Part shown: positions 43,447-64,000 of the stretch, one piece after another
Layout: each line of letters opens with the position of its first letter
Position numbering within the stretch: the stretch's first letter is position 1
Position numbers and translations under genes: made by a program
Virus record (IMG/VR): IMGVR_UViG_3300027573_000779
Coordinates: 62,001-126,000 of that record
DNA length: 64,000 nucleotides
Direction: 5' to 3' (one strand)
Notes under the pieces: generated by a model
Seen by the model: only the letters and a program-made list of their open reading frames with translations
The model's database searches: none
What the model was told of the DNA's origin: nothing

Positions 43447-46400
43447 ATGTCAACCAGATTATATTTAAATTGGAACGAATCGGGGTATAATGCATCCCTA
43501 AGTAAATATTACTCTGGATGGCAATCCGGCTCAAGTAGATTTTCAGTATATGGTTTGGTGCAAAAAGAAGGTATTACAGACAGATATGCTCCCAATCATT
43601 TAGACTTTCCTATAACTACCGGATTTATTCCGTTTGCTATGTCGAAAGCTCTCTCCGAACCCTTAGTTTCGGGAGTTTATAATACTGGATTGTTTTCTGG
43701 AATATCTACTTATTTATGTGGAAAAACCGGGACTTTTGCTATTCAGGTTGGTATTTATAATTTCGATGGGAGTCAGTTAAAAAGCGAAATTTTTCCTGTA
43801 ACAACCGGAAGAAACATAGTTATAACAGATTCTGTTCAAGGAAAATATCTTACAGATATTTTCCCAAACACAGGTTTGCATTCTGGTTTTACGGCAGATA
43901 GAGGAGATAGACTTGGAATAGTCTATGGTTTTTATAATAGAACTAATAGTACTAGTAATTTTCATTTTGAATCAGCCGCAACTACAAACATTGGAGATTT
44001 TTCATTTAGCGAAACCCCCGCAGAAGTATTCGATTTACCACAGTTAGGTACTTTTAAAAATCCTTGGATTGAATTTTCTAATAATTTTCAATTTGTTAAA
44101 ATAAAAAACATACAAGGAAAAGCGGCTATTAGCAGAGGAGCTAGGGATATAAGAGGAACTGCTAGAATTGCTACTCCTCCTTATTATTATGAAAATACCA
44201 CTCCGATAATATTGCCATATTACGGAGGAGGTTCGACCTATCCTTCAACAATTAATGTCACTGGTTTGGATTCAAGTAAAACTTCAGTGACCGTTTGGAT
44301 TAATGGATTTGCTTATACTAATCCTAGAAACGTAGAAATATTGTTGGTTTCTCCTAGTGGAAGAAATATTGTTTTGATGGGTGACAATTCACCGTCAACA
44401 ACTTCAGTTAGCGGTTTAAATTTAACTTTTAACCAAAGTTCTCCTCATATAATGGGAGCTAGTAAGAGGTTATCTGGCGTATCTTATCTCCCTACACTTA
44501 ATAATGAGTCTCGATTTTTCCCTCCTGCTTATTCTGGTATTATTGACAATACAATAGCTAATTCAAATTTGAATGTTGTTTCTGGAGACGACCCCAATGG
44601 AACTTGGTCGTTGTATGTTCTAACCCAAGACGCAAGAATTGGAGGAATTAAATCTTGGGGGCTTTCTTTTGCTAACAATGCAGCTCAAGTTGCTCATTTT
44701 TCATTAAGTGGAAGTTTTGGCCCATTAACCGTTCCAGAAACACAAAGCGGCAGAGCAAGAATTAAAGTTACTAGAACTCCAACTACAAATTGGATGTATA
44801 GTATAAAGACAGGAGGGGGCGACCCTGAAATTACTGATTTTGTTTCTGGATATTCATTCGGAGAAGCTATTTTAAAATCAACGGGAACTTATGAATATAT
44901 CTATCCATATGCTATTGTAGGAGACTTTCTCCAATCTTTTAGTGGTGTTGGTGGCAATAGAAATCATATAGAATTTTACTTTTCTGACCCAGAATGGGGG
45001 TCAGCGGTTTATTTAAGGAACGAACAACCCATTTTCCCCACTAACGATGGTCTGTTTTGGAGCAATGGTAATCAAGCCTACGAAATAACAGCGGGAGCAT
45101 TACACAATTCTGGTATTTGGGAATTACAACGACTTCTTTTTCCGGCGCAAATTGGTTTAGCTAAAATTATCAAATTAAACGTTAATAACCAAACCGCAGT
45201 TGCTAGGATTTTTAATACGGTTAGATGGTCTATTAACGGTGTAGCGCGAATTGCTGGCGCGGGAGCACAATCTTACGACCAATTAGGCAAAGCTAGAATA
45301 AGCACTACCACACAAAGAACTCAAACTGGTTTAGCGCGAATTTTAACCACCAGCCAAAGAACACAAACCGGCATTGCTCGAATTCTTAATACCAGCCGTT
45401 GGTCTCAAACCTGCATTTCTAGAATTAAGGTTACTACAACTCAAACTCAAAGTTGTAGGGCTAGAATTCAGGTTACAACTCGCAATAGTCAAACAGGTCT
45501 TGCTAGAATTAAGGCTACAAGTTCTCGCGTTCAAACAGGGTTGGCACGAATTTTAAACACTACACGAAATACCCAAACCGGTTTATCTAGGATTAAAACT
45601 ACAAGTAATTGGAGCCAAACTTGTAAAGGTAGAATTAAAGTTTCTACTTCCAATATTCAAACTGGCGTTGCTAGAATCAGAGTTTCAACAAATAGAACTC
45701 AAACCGCTTTAGCTAGGATTTTAAATACAAGCAGAACAAGTCAAACTGGTCGCGCAAGAATTCGGACAACAACACAGAATAGCCAAACTGGGGTTGCGAG
45801 GATTAAAGCCGCAACCAGTCGCTCTCAAACCGGTTTAGCAAGAATTTTAAATACTTCTAGATTTACTCAAACTGGCGTTGCTAGGATTAAAAATACAATT
45901 TCATGGACCCATACTGGCGTTGCTTACATTGCTGCTCTTGGAAGTCAGATTAGAGTTCAACTTGGTAAAGCTCGCATACTTAATACTGTTAGATATAGTC
46001 AAACTGGCAAGGCTAATATTAAACATATTAGGAGCTACACGCAAACTGGTATTGCTAGAATTCGCTGCACAATAAATAGAACTAATTCTGGTTTGGCGCG
46101 AATCAAAGCTTCAATATCTCAAAGTCAACTTTGCGTTGCTAGAATTAAGACTACAAGTTCTTTTAGCTGCCAAGGCAAGGCAAGAATTCAAAGAGCTTCT
46201 CAATGGACCGTTAACGGCCTAGCTAGGGTTAAAGTAACCGACAATAATTCTCAAACTGGCGTTGCAAGAATCAAGGCTACAACTCAGAATTCTACTCAAG
46301 GTAAAGGAAGAGTTCTCCGCACAATTCAGCAATCTCAAACTGGTAAGGGTTATATTACTGTATCGGCGGCTTCGAACCGGACCCAAACAGGTATTGCTAG

Positions 46401-46911
46401 AATTCTAAGAAGTTCAACTCAAAATCAGCTTTGTGTTGCTAGGATTAAAACTACTCAAAATAACAATGTTAATTGTGTAGCCCGAATTAAAACTACAAGT
46501 AGTAGAATAATTACTTGTATTTCAAGAATCTCTAAGTCTAGCACCCAAAATCAAACCGGTGTTGCTAGAATCAGAACTAGCACCAGAAATAGTATTTCTT
46601 GCTTAGCTAGAATCAAAACCACTACTTTAAACTCAACAACAGGTAAAGGTAGGATTCAAACTACTTCTAGACATAGCAATACTGGATTAGCAAAAATTAG
46701 AGTTTTAAAGACCCAAACTCTTACGGGTATAGCTAGAATTTTCGGAACTCAAAGAAGAACGACAACCGGTTTAGCTTTTATATTCCCTTATAGTATTACA
46801 GAATTACCTAAAAAGGAAATTATTGCTACTATTTTGGGTCAAAAAGTGACGGGTCCTCAAGGTGTCAGAATTGGACTAATTATCAAGGAGGTTATTGTTA
46901 GGGTTCCATAG
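43447..46911 (+). CDS. Fibre-like protein with proprotein-convertase P-domain and QTGxARI repeats
   Basis: YPSTINVTG...ILLVSPSG...NGTWSLYV...IKSWGLSF (P-domain); roughly 40 repeats. Confidence 0.7.
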   Translation: MSTRLYLNWNESGYNASLSKYYSGWQSGSSRFSVYGLVQKEGITDRYAPNHLDFPITTGFIPFAMSKALSEPLVSGVYNTGLFSGISTYLCGKTGTFAIQVGIYNFDGSQLKSEIFPVTTGRNIVITDSVQGKYLTDIFPNTGLHSGFTADRGDRLGIVYGFYNRTNSTSNFHFESAATTNIGDFSFSETPAEVFDLPQLGTFKNPWIEFSNNFQFVKIKNIQGKAAISRGARDIRGTARIATPPYYYENTTPIILPYYGGGSTYPSTINVTGLDSSKTSVTVWINGFAYTNPRNVEILLVSPSGRNIVLMGDNSPSTTSVSGLNLTFNQSSPHIMGASKRLSGVSYLPTLNNESRFFPPAYSGIIDNTIANSNLNVVSGDDPNGTWSLYVLTQDARIGGIKSWGLSFANNAAQVAHFSLSGSFGPLTVPETQSGRARIKVTRTPTTNWMYSIKTGGGDPEITDFVSGYSFGEAILKSTGTYEYIYPYAIVGDFLQSFSGVGGNRNHIEFYFSDPEWGSAVYLRNEQPIFPTNDGLFWSNGNQAYEITAGALHNSGIWELQRLLFPAQIGLAKIIKLNVNNQTAVARIFNTVRWSINGVARIAGAGAQSYDQLGKARISTTTQRTQTGLARILTTSQRTQTGIARILNTSRWSQTCISRIKVTTTQTQSCRARIQVTTRNSQTGLARIKATSSRVQTGLARILNTTRNTQTGLSRIKTTSNWSQTCKGRIKVSTSNIQTGVARIRVSTNRTQTALARILNTSRTSQTGRARIRTTTQNSQTGVARIKAATSRSQTGLARILNTSRFTQTGVARIKNTISWTHTGVAYIAALGSQIRVQLGKARILNTVRYSQTGKANIKHIRSYTQTGIARIRCTINRTNSGLARIKASISQSQLCVARIKTTSSFSCQGKARIQRASQWTVNGLARVKVTDNNSQTGVARIKATTQNSTQGKGRVLRTIQQSQTGKGYITVSAASNRTQTGIARILRSSTQNQLCVARIKTTQNNNVNCVARIKTTSSRIITCISRISKSSTQNQTGVARIRTSTRNSISCLARIKTTTLNSTTGKGRIQTTSRHSNTGLAKIRVLKTQTLTGIARIFGTQRRTTTGLAFIFPYSITELPKKEIIATILGQKVTGPQGVRIGLIIKEVIVRVP
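45148..46783 (+). repeat. Coding tandem repeat, 42-nt / 14-aa period
   Basis: For example QTGLARILTTSQRT QTGIARILNTSRWS QTCISRIKVTTTQT. Confidence 0.9.
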
Positions 46912-51281: not shown

Positions 51282-51429
51282 GGTGACGCCCAAGCTCGAA
51301 TATATTAAATCTACAGCTTTTTTAATTAAATTTAAAAACTGGGATGATAGCACTAAAAAAGACTTTATTAAAAATTTAGGCGGAAAGGTAAATTTTAAAC
51401 AAACACAGGAGTTTTTAAATACATTATGA
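51265..51429 (+). CDS. Small hypothetical protein
   Basis: Fills the gap; ATGA overlap with next gene; start uncertain. Confidence 0.4.
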   Translation: MEEKFRVTPKLEYIKSTAFLIKFKNWDDSTKKDFIKNLGGKVNFKQTQEFLNTL

Positions 51430-52151
51430 AAAAATTGCACGAGTTCACGGTATATAAGGAAACCGAAATAGAAGTTACGGTAAAGGATGAAAACGATAAG
51501 GACGTAGTAAAAAAGGAAAAGAAACGCGAGCCTTTTAAGTATTTTATCGCTAAACCTACCCGAAATCAAATTGATGAAGCAGACTTTTTCTATGCTCAAA
51601 AGTTTAATGAGGCGGCTAAAGCAGGACTTTTAACTAGAGCCTTGCTCGCTAAACGTTATTCAAACGATGGCGGCTCAATGAGTGAACCGGATAAAGAACA
51701 GTATGTATCGCTTTATACCGCCCTTTTTACCAAGGAAAATGAATATAAATCTTTAGCCGGTTTGCCGGAAGATAAGCAGGACAAGGAGAAAATAAAGAAA
51801 GTTACAGAAGAAATTATTGAGCTTCAAAAAGAAATTCAAGATTTTGAAGCTACCCAAATGAGTCTTTACGACCAAACTGCCGAAAGTTGGGCTAGGAATA
51901 AAACTATTCTTTGGTGGGTTCTTTTCCTGTCATATAAGTATACTGACGGCGAAAATTTTGAACCTGTTTTTAAAGGCCAGATTTTTGAGGAAAAAGACGC
52001 TGTTTATGGGGAAATTTGGGATTCAGAGGATAGTTTTCAGTTGGAAGTTGTTAATAAATTTGTCTTCTTTGTTAGTTTTTGGTATACAGGTCGCGCCAAT
52101 AAGCCAGAAGATTTTGCCGAAATAGCTAAAAGATTTGAACCAGAGTCCTAA
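51426..52151 (+). CDS. Putative tail assembly chaperone (gpG-like)
   Basis: Charged helical protein between tube and tape measure genes. Confidence 0.55.
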   Translation: MKKLHEFTVYKETEIEVTVKDENDKDVVKKEKKREPFKYFIAKPTRNQIDEADFFYAQKFNEAAKAGLLTRALLAKRYSNDGGSMSEPDKEQYVSLYTALFTKENEYKSLAGLPEDKQDKEKIKKVTEEIIELQKEIQDFEATQMSLYDQTAESWARNKTILWWVLFLSYKYTDGENFEPVFKGQIFEEKDAVYGEIWDSEDSFQLEVVNKFVFFVSFWYTGRANKPEDFAEIAKRFEPES

Positions 52152-52204: not shown

Positions 52205-53221
52205 GTGAATAAACTAGATGAAATTAAACATAAAATTGCTCTTGCTGATATTTTAGTAGGTTATTCCACAGTAATATTTAATAATCAAACCATCTATATC
52301 AAACATTTTACCTTTCAAGAACACCTAAAAGTTGAACAAGAATATGAAACAAGCTTTGAAATAGCTGTTAAAAAGGGCGTTCCAACCATTGAAGACAAAA
52401 TAAAAGAACTTATTAAAGAAAAAGAGTGGACCGACGAAGAAGAAAAACAGTTCCAAAAACTTCCTCAAGATATAGGTATTTTAAAAGATACCAAGAAAAA
52501 ATTCTTCTTGGAAAAAGACGTGGAAAGAATTGATAAAAATATTAAGGCTGAAGAGGAGAAATTGCAAAAATTGGAGACTAAAAGAAACAGCCTATTAGGT
52601 TACACCGCAGAAACTTACGCAACAAAAAAAACTAACGAACTGTTTGTTTTTCATACCTTTAGAAATCAATTAGAACTAGATAAAACTTTATATTCTTGGG
52701 AAGAGTTTAATGAGTTGGATGAAAGTCAAATGGGCGATTTAATTAATCTTTTTAATAAAGATTGCGTTAGATTTGCCCCTCAAGAGATGAAAAAAACAGC
52801 TATTTTAAACTCTCACATGCAAATGATTTATTTGGCGGGAGAAGATTTGTGGAACTTTTATGGTAAGCCGGTAGTTCAATTTACCGCCCGTCAAAGCGAG
52901 CTTTATAGCCTAGGACGTTATTTTAAAGGACTTATTTCGGACTTAAAAGATAAGGTCACTAGCGATGTTTTAGACGACCCGGATAAACTAATTCAATATG
53001 TAGACTCTCAAAAAGCCGCTGAAACCCTTGGAACCGCCAAAATTCCTGAAGGAAAAGAATCAATTGGAGGAGGAACGGCTATTGTGGGAGCTTCCACTGA
53101 AGATTTAAAGAAATTAGGCTTAGATAAAGAAAAGGGCGCTGATAGTTTGGCTGAAGAAGCTGGAAAGAAAGGCGGCTCTTTAAATATGGAAGATTTATTA
53201 AAATTACACGGTTTGGTGTAA
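52205..53221 (+). CDS. Putative tail assembly chaperone (gpT-like)
   Basis: Directly before tape measure; FYGKPVVQFT..Q..L and DDPDKL motifs. Confidence 0.55.
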   Translation: MNKLDEIKHKIALADILVGYSTVIFNNQTIYIKHFTFQEHLKVEQEYETSFEIAVKKGVPTIEDKIKELIKEKEWTDEEEKQFQKLPQDIGILKDTKKKFFLEKDVERIDKNIKAEEEKLQKLETKRNSLLGYTAETYATKKTNELFVFHTFRNQLELDKTLYSWEEFNELDESQMGDLINLFNKDCVRFAPQEMKKTAILNSHMQMIYLAGEDLWNFYGKPVVQFTARQSELYSLGRYFKGLISDLKDKVTSDVLDDPDKLIQYVDSQKAAETLGTAKIPEGKESIGGGTAIVGASTEDLKKLGLDKEKGADSLAEEAGKKGGSLNMEDLLKLHGLV

Positions 53222-53242: not shown

Positions 53243-56200
53243 ATGGCCAATGATGGAGTAAGAGTACCTGTAGTACTAGAGTGGAATCAAGCGATTCAAG
53301 ACTCTATAGCACAGGCACGAAGAATCCCGCCAGTTAACGTTAGAGTTAATACTGGCCGGATTGGAGATGGTTTTAAACACGCGTCTAAAGAGGCCGAACA
53401 GTTTGAACGAGCCTTAGCTAGCGCCCAAACCCGCGTTTTAACCCTCGGGGCGTCTTTCGGCGCTCTGTTCGCAATTCAAAGAGGCTTTAAAGCCTTAATC
53501 CAAACAACCATTGATGTTGAAAAGCAGCTTAAAGACATTAATGTTATTTTGGGAGTAAGCACAAGCAGTCTTAGCACCTTTTCTGAGCAACTGTTTGGTA
53601 TAGCTAAAAATACCGGCCAAAGCTTTGAAACAGTAGCTAAAGCCGCCTTGGAATTTAGCCGCCAAGGTCTTGGAGTTCAAGAAACTTTAAAAAGAACCAA
53701 TGACGCCCTTATTTTAACCCGCCAAACTGGATTAGATGCCGCTGAAGCAACCGACGCTATCACTGCCGCTATTAACAGCTTTAGTCAAGCTGCTCTGACT
53801 TCAAGCGATATTGTTAATAAGTTTGCTAAGGTTGACCAAAACTTTGCAGTTAGTTCCGCTGACTTAGCAGAAGCTATTAAACGGGTGGGTTCTAGCGCTG
53901 AAGAAGCGGGAGTAGGAATTGATGAACTTATTGCTTTAGTTACCTCTGCCCAACAAATAACTCAACGTGGCGGTGCTGTAATTGGTAACGCTTTTAAGAC
54001 TATTTTTACTCGTACAGCCAGACCCCAAGTGCTTAATGACCTTGAACAACTTGGAATTACTGTCAGAAACGCTCAAGGAGATATTCTCCCGGCTGTTCAA
54101 ATCCTCACAAATTTGGCGAACAGTTATGATAATTTAAGTCAGGCCCAACAATCTGCCGCCGCTGAACTTGTAGGGTCTGTTTATCAAATTAACATTTTAA
54201 AAGCTTCTTTAAAAGATTTGGGTAAAGAACACTCGTTTTACTCTAAGGCTCTCAATGACTCTTCAACCGCAACTGACGAAGCTGTTCAACGTAACGAAGC
54301 TTTAAATACAACTCTAGCGGCTTTAATTAATAGAACTAAAGAAAACGTAAGGCAGTTTTCGGCTAATGTGGGACAGGACACTTTTGGCCCTTCAATTCGA
54401 AGAGTTGCTGGTCTTGCTAATGGTTTCTTGGAAAATGCTAATAACATTTTAGGTGCCGATAAAGCTGAAGTGGCTTTTAAAGAAATTGGTTCAGTTCTTG
54501 GAAAAGGACTGGTTAGGGGTTTTGGACAGTTCTTACAAGGTCCGGGTTTGGCGCTGATTGGTGTTGCACTGTTTAAATTTGCCAGTCAGTTCGCAAGGCT
54601 GGCAACAGAAGCTTATAAACTTTTGACTGACCTTAACAAAAGCACTGACCAAAGGGCCGCTATTGAGTCTCGCGTTTTAGGCGTTTTAAGACAAGAGCCT
54701 AATATTTATAGCCAAATACTAGGAAATAGTTTAAGTGTTGTTCAGGCACAAGAAAAGGTTCTTCAAATTATAACGGCACAAAATGCAGCCTTAAACGCCC
54801 AAAAAGCAATAGCTTCACAACTAACATCCACCCTCATTAATACTGGCGCAGTAGGAGTCAATCCTAAGACTAGGGAAGTGGTGACCAATCCAGCTTTAAA
54901 AAAAACACGCTCAGAAGGTAGCATTCCGAACTTTGCGGTAAATATTTTGGACGCTCAAAAGGAAATTGAAGGCGCTTATAAAGCTAAATACATTCCCGGC
55001 CAAGTGCGCCAAGTGGGAGACGCAGTAATTAATAATGCAGAAAGTATTAAAACTAGCGCCGCACACCCCCAAGAAAAAGCTATAGTGCCGCCTCAAGGCA
55101 GCGAAGCGGGACAAAAATACAAAGAAGCTTATCGAACTATTTATGGTAAAAGCCCTTATGGGGATGCAATTACCAAGGGGAGAAACGCTTTTCAGGTTCA
55201 GTGGATGAAGTCAATCGGCGCTAAAAGAGGGTTGGATTTAACTAATCCAGATAATATTTTAGTGCTTGCAAAACAGTTCAGAGAAACCTATGGGTCACAA
55301 CAGGGGCTGTTGCCATTTAATAAAGGAAAGGTGCCAAGTTTTGCCTCTAGTTTAACTTTATCAACTTCAAAAAACTTTGTTAAACTCGCAAAAGAAAGGG
55401 GTGTCAAAATTGTCAGAGAAGACCAGAGGGTTCCCCAAGGTAGTGCTTTTTATATTCGTTCTGGCGCAGAAGGAAAGAAAATAGTTCTTCCAAAAAAGAC
55501 TCCTATTGATGTTCTTGCTCATGAAGTAGGACACGACCTTTCATATGATTACTTAAATATATACTCTCCAAGACTTTTAAAAGAACAATCAGCTAACATC
55601 GAAGCCTTAAAAAGAATTCCCACAGAAAAAGAAAGACAGGGATATCGTGAAACACTAAGTCCTGCAACTAAAACATATAAAATTGGAATATTAAGAGGTA
55701 TTTTGAAGGATTTTGCTCCTAATATAGACGACGAAAGTATTTTTATTAATGAACTCAGAAAGCAGGAAGGCAAACATTCTGATAGATATTCCCCCGTAAT
55801 AAGAGCGCACAGTACCGCTTTGCGTGCTTTGATAAAAGATATAGGACCAAAAAAAGTAAAAGAGATATTGTCACAATTGCCCGAAATAGACAAAACCGAT
55901 TTAAAAAGAAAACCTTACGCTTCGGGGCACGTTCCAAACTTCAACCTCTTCAGTAAGGTTTCTACTGAAGACGAAGCTAACCGAATGGTTAAAGTCTCTT
56001 CGGTTAACGCGCTGAAGCCTTATTTGAAGAAATCAGAAGGTGATGTGCCAAATTTTGCCTCAGGGCGCGTCCCGAACTTTGCTTCTAGTTTATCTCTTTC
56101 AACTAGTAAAAAACTATTAAGGGAAGCTAAAAAAACAGGAATAAAAACACTAAGAACCAACGAACCAATACCTTATTATGATATTCCTTCGAGTTCGGTT

Positions 56201-59200
56201 CGCGCTCCAAAAGGAACTTCTTTTGATGTTATTGCGCACGAACTTGGTCACGGATTTTCTTATCAGGAAAACCCCCTTCTGGAAAGAGTGCGTTCAGATA
56301 TAAAATCAGAAGTGGGCGCTAATACTGAAATTTTAAACAGATTATCAGGAAAAGAAAAGAAATCATTTGCTAAACAAATGCTTAATCCTTTTAAAACCTA
56401 CAAGATAACATCTTTAGTTGATTCTTTAAGAGGACTGGTTCCCCTACCTGAGATGGTCAAAATCATTGGACAACACAGAATAAGAACCAAAGATTTAGGA
56501 AAAAGAGCCGGGGATTTAGGTAATTATAGTGATTTTAGAAAATCTCAATCACAAGTTCTAAGAGACATTGTTAAGACAGTGGGACCACAAAAAGTTAAAG
56601 AGCGCATTTCGAATCTTTCACCGGTTAATAAACAAGACTTAAAGGCGCGTTATTTTGCTTCAGGGCGAGTGCCCAACCTTGCCAAAAGTTCCTACTCTTT
56701 GGTTCATAGTACAACTCCACAGTTGGCTAAGACAATAGAGTCAGAGGGCCTTAAACCTAGAAGAAAAGAGGGCTTTGAAAAGGGGTATTTTTCGCAACAT
56801 GTTACTAACTTTGAGAAACTTGCTGAAGAAGTCAGAGCAAGCGAGTTTCCTGATTTGCCTAGTAGACTAAACTCGGTTTATTTAACTCCAGAAAGTCGAA
56901 AATTTAATAGGTTTGGAACGCATTTTAAAGTTGCCCCAAATAAAGAAAGCTATATTTTCAACTTAAAAAAGATAGATAAAGCTTTTGATTTAGCGGGTCC
57001 TTATGGGACGAGCACTGTTCCAAATACTAAATTACGCGAACTTGCTCGTGAATATTTCCAATCCGGCATTCCTTTAAATAGACAAAATCTAAATAAAGTT
57101 TTAGAAAAAGAGAAAGAAAATACGGGTTATGACTATGGAGACAATCCTTTTTTTGAAATCCTGACGCCGGGACCAGTTTCAGCTAAAAAAATAAAAAGGC
57201 TTAACTCAAAAGGCGCGGTTCCAAACTTTAATATTGATGTTAATGGTATTTTTTCACAACTTCCTGAGCGTGAACGCGTTGTAATAGAAGAACACGCCGA
57301 TGGATTAAAATTGGGCGAAATTGCAAAGAAATATAATATTTCAAGAAATAAAGCAAGCTCTATTTTCAATCGCGGACGTAATAGTTTTATAAAGCAATAC
57401 GGTTTGGCTAAAAAGGGTTTTGGAGAGTTCGCGGCACAAGGTAAAATCCCAAACTTTGCTAAAATCTACAAACTTCGCACTGGATTTCCTGAACATATTT
57501 TAAAACAAATTCAATCATTACATGGTAAACAATTACGAATATTTCCGACTAAGGACCACTTTCCTAAAGAGTTGCGAAACGATATTATAAAGTATGGAGA
57601 AAACAATATTCCCAAGTTTGACCCAAACTTAATAATCGACAGTAATGAAATTATTGAAGTTGAACACGATGATAATATTCGAGGACTTCATGGAACCAAT
57701 ATTGAGAAAATTGTAGTAAAGAAAACAACGCCTTATTTAGACCAACATCTGGCAATTGCCAAAGATGGCGGTATTAAGAGTATTTGGCACACTTTAAATC
57801 CAGACAGGTTTAATAAACCACAAAATCCTAGAAATAGAATTTATAGTCAGGGCCAAGTGCCGAATTTTGCTTCTTCATTTTCTAATATCAGTTTAGCAAA
57901 AGCTCCACATAATTCTACTGCGATAAGAAGACTGGGAATACCAAAAACCGGCAGTTATGCTTCCTATTACTTTGACAGGAATAAACACATAAACATAAGT
58001 TTCATTGAATCTAACCAAAAAGGGGACGCTTTTAGGTTATTTAAAGCTTTGGGGCGCACCGCCCGTAGAATTAAGCGTCCAATTATAAGTGAAACTCTAG
58101 TCAAATCGTCCAAACAACCTGACGAAAACCAAACTAATTGGGAACAACTTTTAGTAAGATATCCTCAATTACGCTACCGGGACTTACCAAACGCTTCAAC
58201 CAATGGGGTTTTTCGGCCAAATCTTCTAGGAAGTGAAGAACGAAGCTTTAACACCTTTGAAGAACTAAAAACTATAGTAAACCAAGTTCCTTCAGATATT
58301 TTCAAAAAAAACCTTAGAACAGGATTCACAAGTGTCGGCAACCTCTCCACTACTTTTAAAAACAAAGGGCAAGCGCCAAATTTTGCTTACATTCCATTCA
58401 TTTCTCCTCTTGTCGGGCGCGTGGTGACTAATTTGGTGCATTCTGGCGAAGGTTTTAGTATGGCGGCTTTAAAACCTGCTTTTAATTTTGCTAAGGAAAA
58501 GGGCATAAAACAAACGATTAAAAATATTATTTTAGACAAACCGGCGCACCAAGGAACTTTTTTTGGTTTTAACGAAGAAGGAAGAGAAGACTTCGGCTTG
58601 TCCGAATTTGGTTTTCGAAAAATGTTTGGTTTGGAACCTAGAATTCCACCAAATCCAGAAGTTAAACTCCGTCAAATTCCGGGCAAGAAAAACACCTATG
58701 CAATAGGTGGAAGAAATCCACTACAAAATTTTGGAGTTAATCTAACAACAAAAACTCCTCAAAATGTTAGATATCGCCCTCAAGACCCAAATACAATTAG
58801 AAGTTTGTTTAGGAGTCCAGATTTCGGAGCTTTTAACCTAGATGCCAACACCAAAAACAGAAAAATTCGCTATTCTGACACTTGGGATTTTGCACTCCAT
58901 GGGAGCGAAAAGTTGAATTTTAAGGAATTAAAAGACGAACTAAAAAGACGTTTTATTAGACAGCCCGAACTTGAATCTATCAAAGATGAATTTAAATTAA
59001 ACGTTCTTCCAAAAGTTTTAAAACAAAACCCTTTAAAAACAATTAAGGATATTAAAGAACTTTTTCCCAAAAACAGACTTAAGAGTGTTTTGAATCCTGC
59101 GAATCTTGTTTTCCAAGGTAATGCGGGAGCCAGTCTTTTTACTAATGAGCCGGTTCATTCTTATGGTAGTTCACAGTTAACAAAACTGTTTAGGAAGCTA

Positions 59201-62200
59201 GTAAACAGTGTCTCGTCACCAGCAACATTCGTAGGCCAAGTTACAAATCCCGATGACAAAAAACTTCTTTTTGATAGTCTTACTGACCTTGCAAATAGCG
59301 ATATAGACCTTCAAAAAACCAAAGCTACGCCTGCCGCCAAATTTTTAGGTACAAAATATAAACAAAACAAATTAAAAGAATCATTTATAACACTTCAGGA
59401 TAGATTGTATAATAGATTCAATTTTAATCCTTCTTCAAAACGTGATTTTAGTAATCGCAAGGACGCTTTTCCAATTGGCAAGCCGGGAATCAACATTTTT
59501 TCGGCTATAGAAAAATATGGTAGAGCCAAAGGTGAAGTGCCAAATTTTGCTTCCTCTTTGCCTTTATCAACCGCCAAAGAATTATTAGCTCTAGCCAAAG
59601 AAAGAAAGATTCGCATTACTAGAGATAAAGAACTTGGAGCTTTTCATAGATTTTCAGAAAGAAGAATTAATCTTCCTAAAGGCGAATCAATTGAAACTTT
59701 CGCGCATGAATTGGGTCACAGTTTATCTACCGATAATTTTTATAAATTTGCTAATGCAAATCGGATAGAAAGAGAAGTAATGGCTAATCAAGAGATTGTC
59801 CAACGACTGGTTGACCCAAAAGAACAAGAAACATTTAAAACAAACACTCTTGAATCTTTTAAATCTTATAAAAGCGGAATAATACTAGAACGGGTTTGGC
59901 CACAATTGCAAATTCCAGAAGAAAAACGCAATCAATATATTGAAATTCAACAAAAAGAATTTAAAAAAACTCAGAGAAGTAAAGGTATAAGTCCAGAGCA
60001 TCGAAGTAGCGCTGCTGTATTACGAAAACTTGTTAAAGATTTTGGGCCAAAAACCATAAAACAACTTATTAGTTCCACTCCCCGCGACGAGAGGGAAGCT
60101 TTAAAACTGCGCTATTCTTTTGGAAAAATCCCTAGTTTTGCCGTAATGAGTCCGCAGGAAAAAGCCTTTAAAGATATCGCTTTAAGACTAAATTCAGAAA
60201 AACATATAGGATATGGCCCACAAAAATATTTTTTACCATTTTTGTCTGATAAAACCGTAAATCCCTATCAATCATTATATTATAGCACCCCATACGAACA
60301 ACAACAAACAAAAAAAGAAGAAGTTGAAAAGAAACTAATAAATTTTATTCCCGAAGGTAAAAATTTCCTAAGACCATATAACAATATTCTACAGCAAGCC
60401 CCCGCTGTTAAAGATGCTTACAGGTTTGTAAGAAACCTTTTTGGTGATTTTGCTGGTCGTGGTTCTGGCGACCCTCTTGAGCGTTCTGCAAACAACTATT
60501 TGAAGATAATGCGTGGTTTACAAAAAACCGGTGTTTTTAAAGAAATAAACAAACTGTCGCCGCAACAATTATTAAGAGGAGGGATAAAATCAGGTAATCT
60601 TTCTCTATACGGTTTTGGGGGAGACCCCCTTCCTGAATCAAAATTCAAAACAAGAGCTTTGGAGTCTGGCAATCGCGACCTTGTGGCTAACGACCCATTA
60701 TATTCGTTTCATCAAAGGTTTGAAAGTAAAAAAGAAGAATTAAAACTAAGAAAACAGTTTAAAGCTTTTACAAGCTCCTTTGTAAACTCTGTTTCTAAAT
60801 TCAGGAACATTCCAAGAATAAAAAATAAACTTGAAGAAATAACTGGCGGTGACCATACAAGACTAGCCCTAACTGCAAAAAAATATATTCCGCCTGAAAT
60901 TTATGAACGTTTAGCTTACCTAAGCAAAACCTTTGTAAATACAAAACGGCAGGCTTATAATCTTGGTGTAGACATTGATTCTCCATTTTACTTTCGTGGA
61001 CAAAGTAGAAGCGAAGCGGCAATTTTAGACAAACTTAAAGAATTTACCTCTTTGGGATTTGCAAGTCAGACAGATAGATTAGGCGTTACTTTAAATAATA
61101 ATCCATTGTTTGCTGCTGCTTTTGGCGTTACTTCCGGCAAAGAGTTTGGAAAACCGGGGTTATTGGGAATTTATAGAAAAAAACAAATCGACAGTAGAGA
61201 ACCAAGAAGGCTAGGAGAAAACATCTCTTCTGGCAGGCTTAGAATAGATGACCTGTTTGGTTTTATTGATTTGGCGGCTCAAAAATTTGTTCCAGCGTCT
61301 TCTCTAAGTAAAGTATATGGTCCAGAACACGCGCCCTCTTCTGAAATTCTGGAGAAAACCAAATCTTTGCTAAGTAAAGAAGATTACGACATAATAAAAT
61401 CTCAAAGTTTACATAAAGATTATAATCCAAACACACAATTAACTCTTACAAGAGGATTAGATGTTCGTAGAGGAAAGAAAATATCAGACTACCGTGGTCC
61501 AAGTCAAACTAACCCCAATCTTGGCGAACTTTCTTTTAAAGAGTTGCTTGACTATCTAAAACACTCAATAGATACTACCCAACCGGGAGTTATTCCAACA
61601 GGTGGGCCAGAAAGTTCTTTTGCAAATGTCAGTTCTGACGCTATTTTAGTTAAAAACCGAAAAACCGCTAAAGAATTAGAAAATAAACCCGTTCAAAAAG
61701 AGGGACAGGCGCATTTCCAAAGGCTGGTCAGTCAATCAGAATTATTCGGATACGACAGACTACAAAACCTTTTTGATAACCCAAATCTTTCAACAGAAAG
61801 AAAAAACAAACTGTTGAGAAGCGGAATCGTTGTTAATCTTCCTGAAATTAGAGGGCAAATTGGATATAGAACGGCAGCACCCGAACGCGAATACCCAATT
61901 TTAACATCAACCCCAAAAACTTCTGGACCTGTAAATATTGGCAGATTATTTGCTGTTTCGCCTTATATATTCAAAAAATCAGGTTATTCAAAAGGAAAGT
62001 TGCCAAACTTTGCAAAAGCTCCGCAATTTTCTCAACTTCAATTAAAAGAAATTTTGGGCGGCTCAACTGAAGCTAGAAAAGCTGTTTTCCAAGACAGTCA
62101 ATTTGTTTTAAAATACGGAAAATCTTCTGGTCACGCTATAAATGAATTTGTTTCAAATAGATTATTTAATGCTTTTGGCGAAAACGTGCCCGAAGCTCAA

Positions 62201-64000
62201 TTAATTGACACTCCTCAAGGTAAAGCCTTTCTGTCTAAATTCATCCAAAGTCAATCTTTTGGAGAACTGTATGATAAAGGAGATATTAATACAAGACAAA
62301 GATTAATTCAAGGAGTTAAACCTTCTTTTGCGGCTCATGCGGCCTTTGCTAATTGGGACGCATTTGGCGATTGGAATCCAGCAGGAGCCAATGTAAGACT
62401 AGATTCAAATAATAGACAGTTTTTTGTGGACTTGGGTGGGGCTTTAGCTTATAGAGGTTTGGGCGCACCTAAACCCAATTTTGGTCCAGAAGTGCCCGAA
62501 CTGCGTTCTCTTATTGATTATGCATCTAATCCTTATGCTAAAGCCGCTTTTAAATTTCAACCAGAAGAGCTAAAATCTAATGTTGCCGATTTTCTAAAAA
62601 GAACTCCGTCAAATTTAAGCGGTTTGTTAGAGTCTTTAAATAGTGAAACCCAAGGGGACCCACATATCACTAAAGCACTAAAACAAATTCCTAATCGTTT
62701 AAATTATCTTAGAAACTTTATTAAATCCAAAGGTTCTATCCCAAATTTCGCGTTCTTTTCAGGAATAGCTTCTGTCGCGCAATCACTTACAGGAGCTAAA
62801 AAACTTCCAAAACAAAACATTCGTGCTAACATTACTCCCGAAGAAATGGAGGCAATCTATTTTAATTACGCTAAAACCATTTATAATCCTCAAAAAGGAA
62901 AAATCCCAGTAGGTTTAAATTATTTTGCGAACAAGGCTTTCAATTCCGCGATGTTTGAACATCAAGGCTCTTATGTTTTTGGTTCTCACGATAACGAGTT
63001 GTTCCTTCCAACTCACTTTGCTCCAAAAAGCTTAAAGGGCGGATTTGCGGCGCAAAAAGCATTAAGTGAATATTCTAATGTAATGTATGCCGTAACTCAG
63101 GAAATGACCCCAATGCTAGAAAGACTTGGGTTCAGTGTGGCTAAATCTGGAGTTAAAGTTCCCTTCAGGGGCGGAACTGCATTAAAAGACTTTTTGGTTT
63201 CTGATAAACTGCGAACCCCAATGTTTCTTACCAATTTCCTTTCTCAAATGAAACAGGGAGCGGGTTCTAAATACGTTAAACAATATTTAACAAGAGAAGA
63301 CCAAGCTAAATTTAGTCATTATTATCCTTATGGTGGGGGAACTCCGGGCGAAGATGAAGCTATTGAATACTTAAGAAACAGAGGAATTACAGCTAATCAG
63401 GGCAAAATTCCTTCGTCTAATGCGTATTTAAAAGCTAAGTTAACGCACGTCCCCAATTTTGCTCTTCTTGACTCTCTTAGGAGTTTAATTGATGTTCAAA
63501 ACAATAAGTTTTTGGGTTCGAAATTACCCAATACACTTGGAGAAATTTACCCTGTTATAAGGGACCAATTTCCTAAAATAGGACCAATCTTAAAGGGAAT
63601 TAACCCTAGATTACTACTAGATGATATTAATGTTGATAGTGGGACATTATATCGAGGTTTTGCTAGAGCTGTGCGCTCAAAAACATATGACGGTCCTTTT
63701 AGAGCATATGACAGTCCTATTAAACCCTCCGAAACCGTCACAGGTGAACTTGACTTTTTATATAACTTTACGCACGCTTTAAATAGAGGCCAACCGTTAA
63801 AATTCCAAAAAGCCTCGCTAGAAGCCCTGTTCCAAATTGGCGCTCAAGCAAAACAAGAAGGGATAACTGATAAAGTAGGTATCAATACAAATAGCGACCC
63901 ATTTTTTAGAAACCTCGGAAACCCGCAACAACATAGAGATTTTGCACGAAACTTTTTAAATTTAGATAAATCAAAACCCAATCAATCCTTTATTCAAAAA
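53243..64000 (+). CDS. Giant tape measure protein fused to an array of enzyme-like modules (3' truncated; absent from ORF track)
   Basis: Hand translation from ATG 53243 shows no stop in 3586 codons. First ~560 aa are TP901-type tape measure (AALEFSRQG, NFAVSSADLAEAIKRVGS, GAVIGNAFKTIFTR); the rest is modules separated by GxVPNFA linkers. Confidence 0.93.
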   Translation, partial: MANDGVRVPVVLEWNQAIQDSIAQARRIPPVNVRVNTGRIGDGFKHASKEAEQFERALASAQTRVLTLGASFGALFAIQRGFKALIQTTIDVEKQLKDINVILGVSTSSLSTFSEQLFGIAKNTGQSFETVAKAALEFSRQGLGVQETLKRTNDALILTRQTGLDAAEATDAITAAINSFSQAALTSSDIVNKFAKVDQNFAVSSADLAEAIKRVGSSAEEAGVGIDELIALVTSAQQITQRGGAVIGNAFKTIFTRTARPQVLNDLEQLGITVRNAQGDILPAVQILTNLANSYDNLSQAQQSAAAELVGSVYQINILKASLKDLGKEHSFYSKALNDSSTATDEAVQRNEALNTTLAALINRTKENVRQFSANVGQDTFGPSIRRVAGLANGFLENANNILGADKAEVAFKEIGSVLGKGLVRGFGQFLQGPGLALIGVALFKFASQFARLATEAYKLLTDLNKSTDQRAAIESRVLGVLRQEPNIYSQILGNSLSVVQAQEKVLQIITAQNAALNAQKAIASQLTSTLINTGAVGVNPKTREVVTNPALKKTRSEGSIPNFAVNILDAQKEIEGAYKAKYIPGQVRQVGDAVINNAESIKTSAAHPQEKAIVPPQGSEAGQKYKEAYRTIYGKSPYGDAITKGRNAFQVQWMKSIGAKRGLDLTNPDNILVLAKQFRETYGSQQGLLPFNKGKVPSFASSLTLSTSKNFVKLAKERGVKIVREDQRVPQGSAFYIRSGAEGKKIVLPKKTPIDVLAHEVGHDLSYDYLNIYSPRLLKEQSANIEALKRIPTEKERQGYRETLSPATKTYKIGILRGILKDFAPNIDDESIFINELRKQEGKHSDRYSPVIRAHSTALRALIKDIGPKKVKEILSQLPEIDKTDLKRKPYASGHVPNFNLFSKVSTEDEANRMVKVSSVNALKPYLKKSEGDVPNFASGRVPNFASSLSLSTSKKLLREAKKTGIKTLRTNEPIPYYDIPSSSVRAPKGTSFDVIAHELGHGFSYQENPLLERVRSDIKSEVGANTEILNRLSGKEKKSFAKQMLNPFKTYKITSLVDSLRGLVPLPEMVKIIGQHRIRTKDLGKRAGDLGNYSDFRKSQSQVLRDIVKTVGPQKVKERISNLSPVNKQDLKARYFASGRVPNLAKSSYSLVHSTTPQLAKTIESEGLKPRRKEGFEKGYFSQHVTNFEKLAEEVRASEFPDLPSRLNSVYLTPESRKFNRFGTHFKVAPNKESYIFNLKKIDKAFDLAGPYGTSTVPNTKLRELAREYFQSGIPLNRQNLNKVLEKEKENTGYDYGDNPFFEILTPGPVSAKKIKRLNSKGAVPNFNIDVNGIFSQLPERERVVIEEHADGLKLGEIAKKYNISRNKASSIFNRGRNSFIKQYGLAKKGFGEFAAQGKIPNFAKIYKLRTGFPEHILKQIQSLHGKQLRIFPTKDHFPKELRNDIIKYGENNIPKFDPNLIIDSNEIIEVEHDDNIRGLHGTNIEKIVVKKTTPYLDQHLAIAKDGGIKSIWHTLNPDRFNKPQNPRNRIYSQGQVPNFASSFSNISLAKAPHNSTAIRRLGIPKTGSYASYYFDRNKHINISFIESNQKGDAFRLFKALGRTARRIKRPIISETLVKSSKQPDENQTNWEQLLVRYPQLRYRDLPNASTNGVFRPNLLGSEERSFNTFEELKTIVNQVPSDIFKKNLRTGFTSVGNLSTTFKNKGQAPNFAYIPFISPLVGRVVTNLVHSGEGFSMAALKPAFNFAKEKGIKQTIKNIILDKPAHQGTFFGFNEEGREDFGLSEFGFRKMFGLEPRIPPNPEVKLRQIPGKKNTYAIGGRNPLQNFGVNLTTKTPQNVRYRPQDPNTIRSLFRSPDFGAFNLDANTKNRKIRYSDTWDFALHGSEKLNFKELKDELKRRFIRQPELESIKDEFKLNVLPKVLKQNPLKTIKDIKELFPKNRLKSVLNPANLVFQGNAGASLFTNEPVHSYGSSQLTKLFRKLVNSVSSPATFVGQVTNPDDKKLLFDSLTDLANSDIDLQKTKATPAAKFLGTKYKQNKLKESFITLQDRLYNRFNFNPSSKRDFSNRKDAFPIGKPGINIFSAIEKYGRAKGEVPNFASSLPLSTAKELLALAKERKIRITRDKELGAFHRFSERRINLPKGESIETFAHELGHSLSTDNFYKFANANRIEREVMANQEIVQRLVDPKEQETFKTNTLESFKSYKSGIILERVWPQLQIPEEKRNQYIEIQQKEFKKTQRSKGISPEHRSSAAVLRKLVKDFGPKTIKQLISSTPRDEREALKLRYSFGKIPSFAVMSPQEKAFKDIALRLNSEKHIGYGPQKYFLPFLSDKTVNPYQSLYYSTPYEQQQTKKEEVEKKLINFIPEGKNFLRPYNNILQQAPAVKDAYRFVRNLFGDFAGRGSGDPLERSANNYLKIMRGLQKTGVFKEINKLSPQQLLRGGIKSGNLSLYGFGGDPLPESKFKTRALESGNRDLVANDPLYSFHQRFESKKEELKLRKQFKAFTSSFVNSVSKFRNIPRIKNKLEEITGGDHTRLALTAKKYIPPEIYERLAYLSKTFVNTKRQAYNLGVDIDSPFYFRGQSRSEAAILDKLKEFTSLGFASQTDRLGVTLNNNPLFAAAFGVTSGKEFGKPGLLGIYRKKQIDSREPRRLGENISSGRLRIDDLFGFIDLAAQKFVPASSLSKVYGPEHAPSSEILEKTKSLLSKEDYDIIKSQSLHKDYNPNTQLTLTRGLDVRRGKKISDYRGPSQTNPNLGELSFKELLDYLKHSIDTTQPGVIPTGGPESSFANVSSDAILVKNRKTAKELENKPVQKEGQAHFQRLVSQSELFGYDRLQNLFDNPNLSTERKNKLLRSGIVVNLPEIRGQIGYRTAAPEREYPILTSTPKTSGPVNIGRLFAVSPYIFKKSGYSKGKLPNFAKAPQFSQLQLKEILGGSTEARKAVFQDSQFVLKYGKSSGHAINEFVSNRLFNAFGENVPEAQLIDTPQGKAFLSKFIQSQSFGELYDKGDINTRQRLIQGVKPSFAAHAAFANWDAFGDWNPAGANVRLDSNNRQFFVDLGGALAYRGLGAPKPNFGPEVPELRSLIDYASNPYAKAAFKFQPEELKSNVADFLKRTPSNLSGLLESLNSETQGDPHITKALKQIPNRLNYLRNFIKSKGSIPNFAFFSGIASVAQSLTGAKKLPKQNIRANITPEEMEAIYFNYAKTIYNPQKGKIPVGLNYFANKAFNSAMFEHQGSYVFGSHDNELFLPTHFAPKSLKGGFAAQKALSEYSNVMYAVTQEMTPMLERLGFSVAKSGVKVPFRGGTALKDFLVSDKLRTPMFLTNFLSQMKQGAGSKYVKQYLTREDQAKFSHYYPYGGGTPGEDEAIEYLRNRGITANQGKIPSSNAYLKAKLTHVPNFALLDSLRSLIDVQNNKFLGSKLPNTLGEIYPVIRDQFPKIGPILKGINPRLLLDDINVDSGTLYRGFARAVRSKTYDGPFRAYDSPIKPSETVTGELDFLYNFTHALNRGQPLKFQKASLEALFQIGAQAKQEGITDKVGINTNSDPFFRNLGNPQQHRDFARNFLNLDKSKPNQSFIQK
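54917..63463 (+). repeat. Dispersed in-frame linker repeat G-x-[VILA]-P-[NS]-[FL]-[AN]
   Basis: Copies start at 54917, 55325, 55925, 56039, 56063, 56663, 57212, 57440, 57851, 58367, 59531, 60122, 61994, 62732 and 63443 (THVPNFA), with a degenerate copy at 63401. Confidence 0.92.

What the first reader, a model, noticed from the sequence alone, without database searches (positions are those of the whole stretch)
55925..56083. Empty and near-empty slots in the module array
Seen: two linkers directly in tandem (GDVPNFA-S-GRVPNFA, 56039-56083), preceded by a module of only 31 aa. A similar close pair occurs at 63401/63443. Inference: scars of module loss or gain by recombination between linkers, implying ongoing turnover of the array.
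Basis: partly seen in the sequence, partly recalled or inferred. Interest (0 to 1): 0.62.

Follow-up and report, generated by a model that had tools for sequence, protein, structure and literature searches.

The report
Doubled linkers in a tape-measure cassette array
The doubled "linker" is real and lies inside a giant phage tail tape-measure protein that carries a string of swappable protein modules separated by one conserved 7-residue motif; near-identical relatives show that modules are exchanged exactly at these motifs, and that such an exchange can leave a doubled linker.

Summary
Observation confirmed. Window 55925-56083 encodes GHVPNFN, a 31-aa spacer, then GDVPNFA-S-GRVPNFA. It lies between two paralogous HExxH metalloprotease modules of a 5,468-aa tail tape-measure protein (TMP) in a 209-kb metagenomic phage contig.

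The motif G-x-[VIL]-P-[NS]-F-[AN] occurs 15 times in the six-frame genome, always in this ORF. It delimits about 17 modules. The same architecture (TMP N-domain, linker-bounded cassettes, TMP C-domain) occurs in at least 279 giant metagenomic TMPs.

Interpretation partly supported. Relatives with 98-99.8% identical TMP N-domains differ by whole cassettes whose breakpoints fall inside linkers. In one pair (P0026/P0027, 98-99% nt identity) a single cassette is swapped, and the doubled linker sits exactly at the swap junction.

However, in-register exchange normally leaves one linker. Doubled linkers are rare by-products (15 of 955 inter-linker gaps). The linkers of this gene share no DNA similarity beyond what the amino acids require.

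What the linker does as a peptide is unresolved; a processing site is my leading guess.

The parts
53243..64000 (+). Giant tail tape-measure protein ORF. It is 5,468 aa in full and continues past the window to contig position 131649. Window residues 1-3586 hold the TMP N-domain and most of the cassette array.
   Evidence: PF10145 PhageMin_Tail scores 93.7 bits against a cut-off of 33.2, at aa 121-307.
55346..55921 (+). Module M02 (aa 702-893), HExxH zincin-like metalloprotease cassette, copy 1.
   Evidence: It is 34-36% identical to M05 and M11. HEVGH plus a downstream E..AN are conserved. Weak phrog_87 metallo-protease hit.
55925..55945 (+). Linker GHVPNFN, the C-terminal linker of zincin M02.
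55946..56038 (+). 31-aa spacer (M03), the 'near-empty slot'. No fold and no relatives.
   Evidence: AF2 pLDDT about 30. No significant similarity in the family or the genome.
56039..56059 (+). Linker GDVPNFA, first copy of the tandem.
56063..56083 (+). Linker GRVPNFA, second copy of the tandem. It is the zincin cassette's own N-terminal linker; linker plus SSLxLSTxK is shared by all three zincin copies.
   Evidence: It shares only 1 of 7 codons with the first copy.
56084..56659 (+). Module M05 (aa 948-1139), zincin cassette, copy 2.
   Evidence: AF2 core pLDDT 70-90.
59552..60118 (+). Module M11 (aa 2104-2292), zincin cassette, copy 3.
63401..63421 (+). GKIPSSN, a half-decayed linker (front half intact). 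First member of the second close pair.
63443..63463 (+). THVPNFA, a linker lacking the Gly. Second member of the second close pair.
54917..54937 (+). First linker of the array (GSIPNFA), at the end of the TMP N-domain. The other single linkers start at 55325, 56663, 57212, 57440, 57851, 58367, 59531, 60122, 61994 and 62732, with two more beyond the window.

Best explanation
The region is a junction inside a cassette array embedded in a phage tail tape-measure protein.

The array consists of independently foldable modules. Here these are three zincin proteases, a sigma-70 region-4 HTH, a DUF2441-like module and many unknowns. In relatives they include ART-PolyVal, GNAT and kinase-like modules. 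The modules are separated by a 7-residue peptide motif, G-x-[VI]-P-N-[FY]-[A/N], in disordered segments.

Cassettes are gained, lost and replaced by joins that fall inside this motif. An in-register join leaves one linker. An out-of-register join keeps both the resident linker and the incoming cassette's own linker, giving an exact head-to-tail doublet.

I read GDVPNFA-S-GRVPNFA as such a doublet. The second copy belongs to the zincin cassette M05, because every zincin copy begins G.VP[NS]FA-SSLxLST. The first copy is the C-terminal linker of whatever preceded it. Only a 31-aa unstructured stub of that predecessor (M03) remains, or the stub is an orphan spacer. The pair at 63401/63443 is an older or more damaged version in which each copy has lost half of the motif.

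Shown: the motif, its restriction to this ORF, the cassette boundaries, and swaps at linkers in near-identical relatives, including one that carries a tandem.

Inferred: that this particular tandem arose in that way, and its age.

Also inferred, at about 0.4: the motif is kept by selection on the peptide as a site read by one common partner. Most likely it is a processing site that frees the modules after the TMP is ejected into the host, with N|F matching the hydrophobic-P1' preference of thermolysin-type zincins.
For: The motif is specific to the ORF.

Family. At least 279 giant TMPs were found. In 127 of them examined, there are 1,082 linkers.

Cassette boundaries. Module homologies run end to end between linkers and their order is shuffled. 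Pfam domains in relatives sit between consecutive linkers: ART-PolyVal 647-809 between linkers at 641 and 824, and likewise GNAT and AAA_33.

Recent swaps. P0026 and P0027 are 99.5% and 95.8% identical in protein and 98-99.5% in nucleotides. They differ by one cassette. The tandem GLIPNYN-KKIPNYA is at the left junction, nucleotide identity ends after ...ATTCCTAATTA, and it resumes immediately after the right linker. Clean one-linker indels occur in P0073/74, P0119/121 and P0090/89. Of 19 pairs with at least 98% identical N-domains, 16 differ in cassette architecture (biased upward by the 90% clustering of the database).

Codons. The two tandem copies use different codons (1 of 7 identical), as do the two copies at the demonstrably recent P0027 junction. 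This fits two independent linkers brought side by side, not a fresh duplication.

Spacing. In the first 16 long proteins examined, inter-linker bodies were 0-5 aa or 20 aa and more, with nothing in between; in the larger 127-protein set a few bodies of 9-19 aa also occur.

Structure. The linkers and M03 are predicted disordered.

Decay. Partial decay in the second pair and loss of the linker after M01a in P0002, P0003 and P0004 show that redundant linkers can erode.
Against: There is no direct evidence at this locus. No relative is closer than 54% in the N-domain, and no read data could be obtained.

Both copies of the tandem are perfect consensus, which could mean that both are needed. In the P0102 lineage a tandem is unchanged in nine variants, so tandems are not necessarily transient.

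The linkers of this gene have no DNA similarity beyond coding. Homologous recombination between them is therefore unlikely here, and joins would have to be illegitimate or microhomology-mediated.

For the processing-site idea: 95 of 126 family members with linkers have no HExxH at all, and no zincin gene lies within 10 kb of two such TMPs. The embedded zincin therefore cannot be the universal reader. The AF2 model does not dock a linker in the active site.
Confidence: 0.6

Rival explanations
1. The doubled linker is functional in itself. Two (or, in P0005, three) copies raise the efficiency of whatever reads the motif, whether by cleavage or by avidity of docking. The tandem is kept by selection and is not a scar.
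For: Both copies match the consensus perfectly while differing at nearly every synonymous position. P0005 has five tandem gaps, including a triple. The tandem is conserved in nine variants of the P0102 cluster that are at least 90% identical, and in P0091/P0092.
Against: Tandems are rare: 15 of 955 gaps, in 9 of 127 proteins. They precede unrelated module types, with no positional rule. The second pair in this protein is decaying. One tandem is polymorphic between 98-99% identical phages. Codon differences are equally expected if the two copies have separate origins.
Confidence: 0.2
2. The tandem arose by replication slippage or unequal crossing-over that duplicated one 8-codon unit (G-x-V-P-N-F-A-S). 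It is unrelated to module gain or loss.
For: The period is an exact 8 codons: GDVPNFAS then GRVPNFAS. In the family, many tandems have a 7-8-residue period, though bodies of 3-5 residues also occur.
Against: Only 15 of 24 nucleotides and 1 of 7 shared-residue codons are identical. Tandem Repeats Finder sees nothing there. A duplication would therefore have to be old and both copies then preserved. The one tandem whose origin can be seen (P0027) came with a swapped cassette.
Confidence: 0.12
3. The linker motif is not a processing site. It is an assembly or docking motif, for example a site bound by the tail-assembly chaperones or the tube or tip lumen, and tandem copies simply add binding sites.
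For: A closely similar motif, G[YLH][IV][PK][KRT][FY][AS]xGG, lies in the TMP C-terminal domain of this and related proteins. The motif is present whether or not a zincin is present. All linkers within one protein share lineage-specific variants (GxVPNFA here, GLIPNY in P0005/P0026/P0027, GF[IV]PNFA in most), which implies one common reader. Two ORFs upstream of the TMP (241 and 338 aa) are conserved in synteny in related contigs: shown at 41-45% identity for L002, and as similar-sized ORFs upstream of the TMP in L004 and L005. In the AF2 model of M16 the C-terminal linker is modelled with pLDDT about 77 against the domain.
Against: There is no evidence that any partner binds it. The irregular spacing of linkers (0 to more than 800 aa) does not fit a periodic tube contact. 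The modules have the make-up of injected effectors, which argues for release.
Confidence: 0.3

Closest known systems
Polyvalent proteins of phages and conjugative elements (Iyer et al. 2017, PMC5512222)
   Same: One giant polypeptide strings together unrelated effector-type domains and often carries one to five zincin-like metallopeptidase domains proposed to process it. Here there are three HExxH modules, an HTH and a DUF2441-like module. Relatives carry ART-PolyVal (PF18760), GNAT and kinase-like modules.
   Different: Here the array is inserted inside a tail tape-measure protein. Every module is bracketed by one conserved 7-residue motif. The paper's text never uses the words 'linker' or 'tape measure protein'. 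Most family members lack any zincin.
P23-45 tail-tape-fused virion RNA polymerase (PMC10770324)
   Same: A giant TMP (5,002 aa) carries a functional globular enzyme that is delivered to the host with the TMP.
   Different: That is a single N-terminal fusion. There is no multi-cassette array, no repeated linker motif and no reported cassette turnover.
MARTX and related autoprocessing multi-effector toxins (PMC3153235)
   Same: Variable effector domains sit between conserved regions and are released by cleavage in the inter-domain linkers. The effector repertoire varies between strains (for the reference; the rest is established knowledge).
   Different: MARTX toxins use a dedicated cysteine protease domain activated by a eukaryotic cofactor and cleave after Leu. 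No such domain or motif is found here. The carrier is a secreted bacterial toxin, not a virion protein.
Polymorphic toxins with a demarcating peptide motif (CdiA VENN, Rhs PxxxxDPxGL); from my own knowledge, not tested
   Same: A short conserved peptide marks the boundary at which variable cassettes are exchanged.
   Different: Those systems have one boundary and one C-terminal toxin with an immunity gene. Here there are up to 27 boundaries in series inside a structural protein, and no immunity genes were seen.

Membership tests
Phage tail tape-measure protein (TP901 / PhageMin_Tail type) | PF10145 PhageMin_Tail domain above the gathering score | tested here: met
   93.7 bits against a cut-off of 33.2, aa 121-307. 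Tblastn finds 24-27% identity to annotated TMPs of Bacillus, Lactococcus and Staphylococcus phages.
Phage tail tape-measure protein (TP901 / PhageMin_Tail type) | Long C-terminal region with the usual TMP C-terminal motifs, conserved in relatives | tested here: met
   The 1,663-aa C-terminal part aligns with that of P0003, P0004 and P0005. The motifs ...VPALL.GGEFV... and [FY]A.GG are read directly from the sequence. That these motifs are typical of TMPs rests on my own knowledge.
Phage tail tape-measure protein (TP901 / PhageMin_Tail type) | Sets tail length and sits in the tail tube | not testable with these tools
   This needs virions. Gene order (two conserved ORFs upstream, tail-like genes downstream in L004 and L005) is compatible.
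Polyvalent proteins (Iyer et al. 2017) | Several unrelated effector or enzymatic domains in one polypeptide of a phage or mobile element | tested here: met
   Three zincin modules, a sigma-70 r4 HTH (23.6 bits, just under the cut-off), and a DUF2441-like / phrog_5663 module. ART-PolyVal scores 39 bits against a cut-off of 31.2, and GNAT also hits, in relatives.
Polyvalent proteins (Iyer et al. 2017) | Zincin-like metallopeptidase with HExxH and a downstream Glu | tested here: inconclusive
   HExxH and E..AN are invariant in six aligned modules. Pfam hits sit only at or below threshold (22-23 bits). There is no structural match in the PDB.
Polyvalent proteins (Iyer et al. 2017) | Delivered into the host with the DNA and processed there | not testable with these tools
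   Inference only.
MARTX-type autoprocessing toxins | Cysteine protease domain that releases the effectors | tested here: not met
   No such Pfam family was found in the protein or in its parts.
DNA-level cassette systems (integron-like) | Conserved DNA recombination site flanking each cassette | tested here: not met
   Codon identity among the linkers equals the random expectation (0.442 against 0.436, P = 0.41). The DNA copies are only 68-92% identical over 25 nt.

The most novel reading that the evidence does not exclude
These tape-measure proteins are a hot-swappable delivery platform. A conserved peptide 'socket', G-x-[VI]-P-N-[FY]-A, serves at once as the exchange boundary for effector cassettes and as the site at which the ejected polyprotein is cut into free effectors. 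A very large group of uncultured, mostly aquatic phages would then re-arm its injected arsenal cassette by cassette. Doubled and half-decayed linkers would be the visible footprints of that traffic.
Probability: 0.3. Interest if true: 0.8.

Novelty: new variant of a known kind. Interest (0 to 1): 0.6.

Why it matters
If this reading holds, the tape-measure protein of a large and so far undescribed group of phages is more than a ruler. At least 279 giant members were found here, some up to 7,751 aa. In these phages the TMP would also be a modular carrier of injected effectors, with a defined peptide boundary at which modules are exchanged between nearly identical phages.

That would extend the 'polyvalent protein' idea to a virion structural protein. 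It would also offer a natural, motif-delimited catalogue of candidate anti-host effectors, most of them of unknown fold. And it gives a simple testable hypothesis: cleavage at N|F in the linker.

The doubled linker itself is a minor detail. Its value is as a marker of where cassettes were joined.

Tried and rejected
Searches for close relatives.
- GenBank phages by blastn: no match.
- IMG/VR with the region, with a zincin alignment and with a P0005 segment: nothing.
- JGI metagenome contigs: only the source contig itself, Ga0208454_1000014.
- Word-based protein search with aa 550-1350: only itself.

Idea that M03 is a remnant of an M14-like module. A BLAST hint (E 0.14; 3e-4 pairwise when the linker is included) did not survive a shuffle and family-wide test without the linker (P = 0.07, not among the top windows). 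Rejected.

M01a and M16 as homologous 'clasp' halves. hhalign aligns only the linker itself. Rejected.

Programmed -1 frameshift between the two ORFs upstream of the TMP. The frames do not overlap. Rejected.

Fold searches. Neither the zincin model nor the M16 model has a significant PDB match. The ESM Atlas feature search of M16 gave no usable hit.

Complex prediction of zincin M05 with the linker-bearing segment 886-947: no verdict. This is evidence neither for nor against binding.

PHROGs and Pfam on the neighbouring ORFs were almost blank.

Full-text search for the motif as a word found no relevant paper.

I first read the codon differences between the two tandem copies as proof of great age. 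I withdrew that.

Full report
**What is there**

The finding lies in one ORF that starts at window 53243 and runs off the window. The window is positions 62001-126000 of a single 208,933-bp contig with 37% G+C. This is JGI metagenome contig Ga0208454_1000014, and it is treated as a virus record.

In the full contig the ORF is 5,468 aa. Its layout is:
- The N-terminus carries a clear PhageMin_Tail domain (PF10145, 93.7 bits).
- The last approximately 1,660 residues are a long TMP-type C-terminal region shared with relatives.
- Between aa 558 and 3805 lie 17 copies of [KSQE]-G-x-[VIL]-P-[NS]-F-[AN].

The strict pattern has 15 hits in the six-frame translation of the whole contig, all of them in this ORF.

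The second 'pair' is GKIPSSN (63401) and THVPNFA (63443). Each keeps only half of the motif.

**Context of the doublet**

The doublet sits between two of three paralogous modules of about 195 aa: M02, M05 and M11. They are 34-36% identical to one another. They keep HExxH and a downstream E..AN. They give threshold-level hits to Reprolysin-type Pfam families and to a PHROG metalloprotease family.

Each zincin copy begins with linker plus SSLxLST[SA]K. The second linker of the doublet therefore belongs to the M05 cassette.

An AF2 model of aa 885-1151 gives pLDDT of about 30 for the first linker, the 31-aa spacer and the doublet. The zincin core scores 70-90, and the C-terminal linker is again low. 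The linkers thus behave as flexible joints, and the 31-aa 'module' has no fold. It also has no significant relative.

Other modules are a sigma-70 region-4 HTH, a DUF2441-like / phrog_5663 module, and many unknowns.

**DNA or protein conservation**

The fraction of identical codons at identical residues among the 17 linkers is 0.442. The expectation from the gene's own codon usage is 0.436 +/- 0.034 (P = 0.41).

The two copies of the doublet share 1 of 7 codons. Repeat finders see only 68-92% identity over 25 nt, and no tandem repeat.

The motif is therefore kept by selection on the peptide. In this gene it offers no stretch of DNA homology suitable for homologous recombination.

**The family**

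An exhaustive HMMER search with aa 550-1350 found giant relatives: P0003 (4,233 aa), P0004 (4,244 aa), P0005 (5,354 aa) and others. A word search with the N-domain found at least 279 proteins of 3,000-7,751 aa. They come from JGI, ENA, Logan and TARA data.

In 127 proteins of at least 1,900 aa I counted 1,082 linkers, and 126 of these proteins have three or more. The family consensus is G-F-[IV]-P-N-[FY]-A, with lineage-specific variants shared by all the linkers of one protein.

The minimal layout has five parts:
- the TMP N-domain;
- a conserved module of about 80 aa (M01a);
- one or more variable modules;
- a conserved module of about 70 aa (M16, or a variant F3);
- the TMP C-domain.

Module homologies run from linker to linker, and module order differs between relatives. 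Pfam domains in relatives (ART-PolyVal, GNAT, AAA_33) lie between consecutive linkers. This links the array to the polyvalent proteins of Iyer et al. (PMC5512222).

The site itself therefore could not be tested. The family supplies the test instead.

P0026 and P0027 are 99.5% identical over residues 1-965 and 95.8% identical over the rest. Their contigs are 98-99.5% identical in nucleotides. They differ by one cassette between two linkers:
- P0026 has GLIPNYA plus a 234-aa module.
- P0027 has GLIPNYN-KKIPNYA plus a 121-aa module.

Nucleotide identity stops inside the left linker (after ...ATTCCTAATTA) and resumes directly after the right linker. A doubled linker thus sits exactly at a recent cassette-swap junction, and its two copies also use different codons.

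Other near-identical pairs differ by whole cassettes with breakpoints in linkers but keep a single linker. Examples are P0073/74 (+198 aa) and P0119/121 (+203 aa), and P0090/89 also differ in this way.

Of 19 pairs with at least 98% identical N-domains, 16 differ in architecture. This number is inflated, because the database collapses sequences that are at least 90% identical.

Doubled linkers are rare: 15 of 955 gaps, in 9 proteins. In the first 16 long proteins, inter-linker bodies were 0-5 aa or at least 20 aa, with nothing in between. In one lineage a doublet is unchanged in nine variants that are at least 90% identical.

**Reading**

Cassette turnover at the linkers is real and recent in the family. 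The usual product is a single linker. A doublet is what remains when the join is out of register and both linkers survive.

The window's doublet has that signature: two consensus copies with unrelated codons, the second integral to the zincin cassette. I cannot date it or show polymorphism.

The 31-aa spacer may be the stub of a lost module or an orphan spacer; nothing identifies it. The second pair, with complementary halves decayed, fits erosion of a redundant doublet. So does the loss of the linker after M01a in P0002, P0003 and P0004, where other relatives keep it.

**What the linker does**

This is not settled.

For a processing site:
- The organisation resembles a polyprotein, with disordered context around each motif.
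- Shared lineage-specific variants imply a single reader.
- The largest arrays carry intact zincins.
- The aromatic or Leu residue after the invariant Asn suits the P1' preference of thermolysin-type enzymes (established knowledge).

Against a processing site:
- 95 of 126 members with linkers have no HExxH.
- No zincin lies within 10 kb of two such genes.
- No docking is predicted in cis.

For a docking or assembly motif:
- A near-identical motif followed by GG occurs in the TMP C-domain.
- Two ORFs upstream of the TMP are conserved in the related contigs.
- The C-terminal linker of M16 is modelled with moderate confidence against its domain.

I put processing at about 0.4 and docking at about 0.3.

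**Comparison and novelty**

The closest concepts are polyvalent proteins (PMC5512222), the P23-45 TMP-RNA polymerase fusion (PMC10770324) and MARTX-type multi-effector toxins (PMC3153235).

None describes a linker-delimited, multi-cassette array inside a tape-measure protein, and a full-text search for the motif found nothing relevant. The library does not cover subscription journals.

I therefore class the system as a new variant of a known kind. The doubled linker is a small but informative feature of it.

No alternative genetic code was used. 

Noticed in passing
window 53243-64000 and beyond (contig 115243-131649): The ORF is 5,468 aa, among the largest tape-measure proteins. Family members reach 7,751 aa (P0112), and at least 279 are longer than 3,000 aa, all from metagenomes and none named beyond 'TP901 family tape measure'.
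   Followed up: partly
window 54938-55345 (aa 566-701): Module M01 is a fusion of two units (M01a and M01b). In most relatives these are separated by a linker (NPYA..GF[IV]PNF), but P0002, P0003 and P0004 have lost that linker.
   Followed up: partly
contig about 130510 (aa 5090) and relatives' C-terminal domains: The TMP C-domain carries G[YLH][IV][PK][KRT][FY][AS]xGG, for example GGLIQKFAKGG here and GGYIPKFATGG in P0003. This looks like the array linker followed by GG, and is a possible evolutionary source of the linker.
   Followed up: partly
window 51426-52151 and 52205-53221: The two ORFs (241 and 338 aa) directly upstream of the TMP are conserved in the same order in L002 (41-45% identity); similar-sized ORFs precede the TMP in L004 and L005 (not compared). 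They have no family hit. By position they are candidate tail-assembly chaperones, but their frames do not overlap, so no frameshift product is expected.
   Followed up: partly
window 55925, 56663, 60122: The C-terminal linkers of all three zincin modules are off-consensus at one position (PNFN, PNLA, PSFA). The linkers in front of M05 and M11 are consensus PNFA, but M02's is PSFA.
   Followed up: no
linker Val codons across window 55331-63449: GTG encodes 5 of the 9 linker valines, against about 13% of valines in the rest of the gene. Overall codon sharing among the linkers is nevertheless at chance.
   Followed up: partly
contig positions for aa 3728-3805 (just past the window end): The conserved last module M16 (NPLGLAVxNxRDEP) folds confidently (pLDDT 81) into a small alpha/beta domain. 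It has no PDB or Atlas match, and its function is unknown.
   Followed up: partly
window 57233-57460: A 76-aa cassette resembles sigma-70 region 4 / LuxR-type HTH (23.6 bits, just under the Pfam cut-off; PHROG sigma-factor families at E 3e-6). It would be a possible injected transcription factor.
   Followed up: no
window 36191-37078 and 43447-46911: An HNH endonuclease ORF (27.4 bits). Separately, a 1,154-aa ORF has a proprotein-convertase P-domain hit (26 bits against a cut-off of 21).
   Followed up: no
P0060, P0023 (relatives): Some family members with the same N-domain have few or no linkers, yet still carry inserted domains (DUF7178 and DUF3293 in P0060). The linker is therefore not obligatory for insertion into the TMP.
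   Followed up: no
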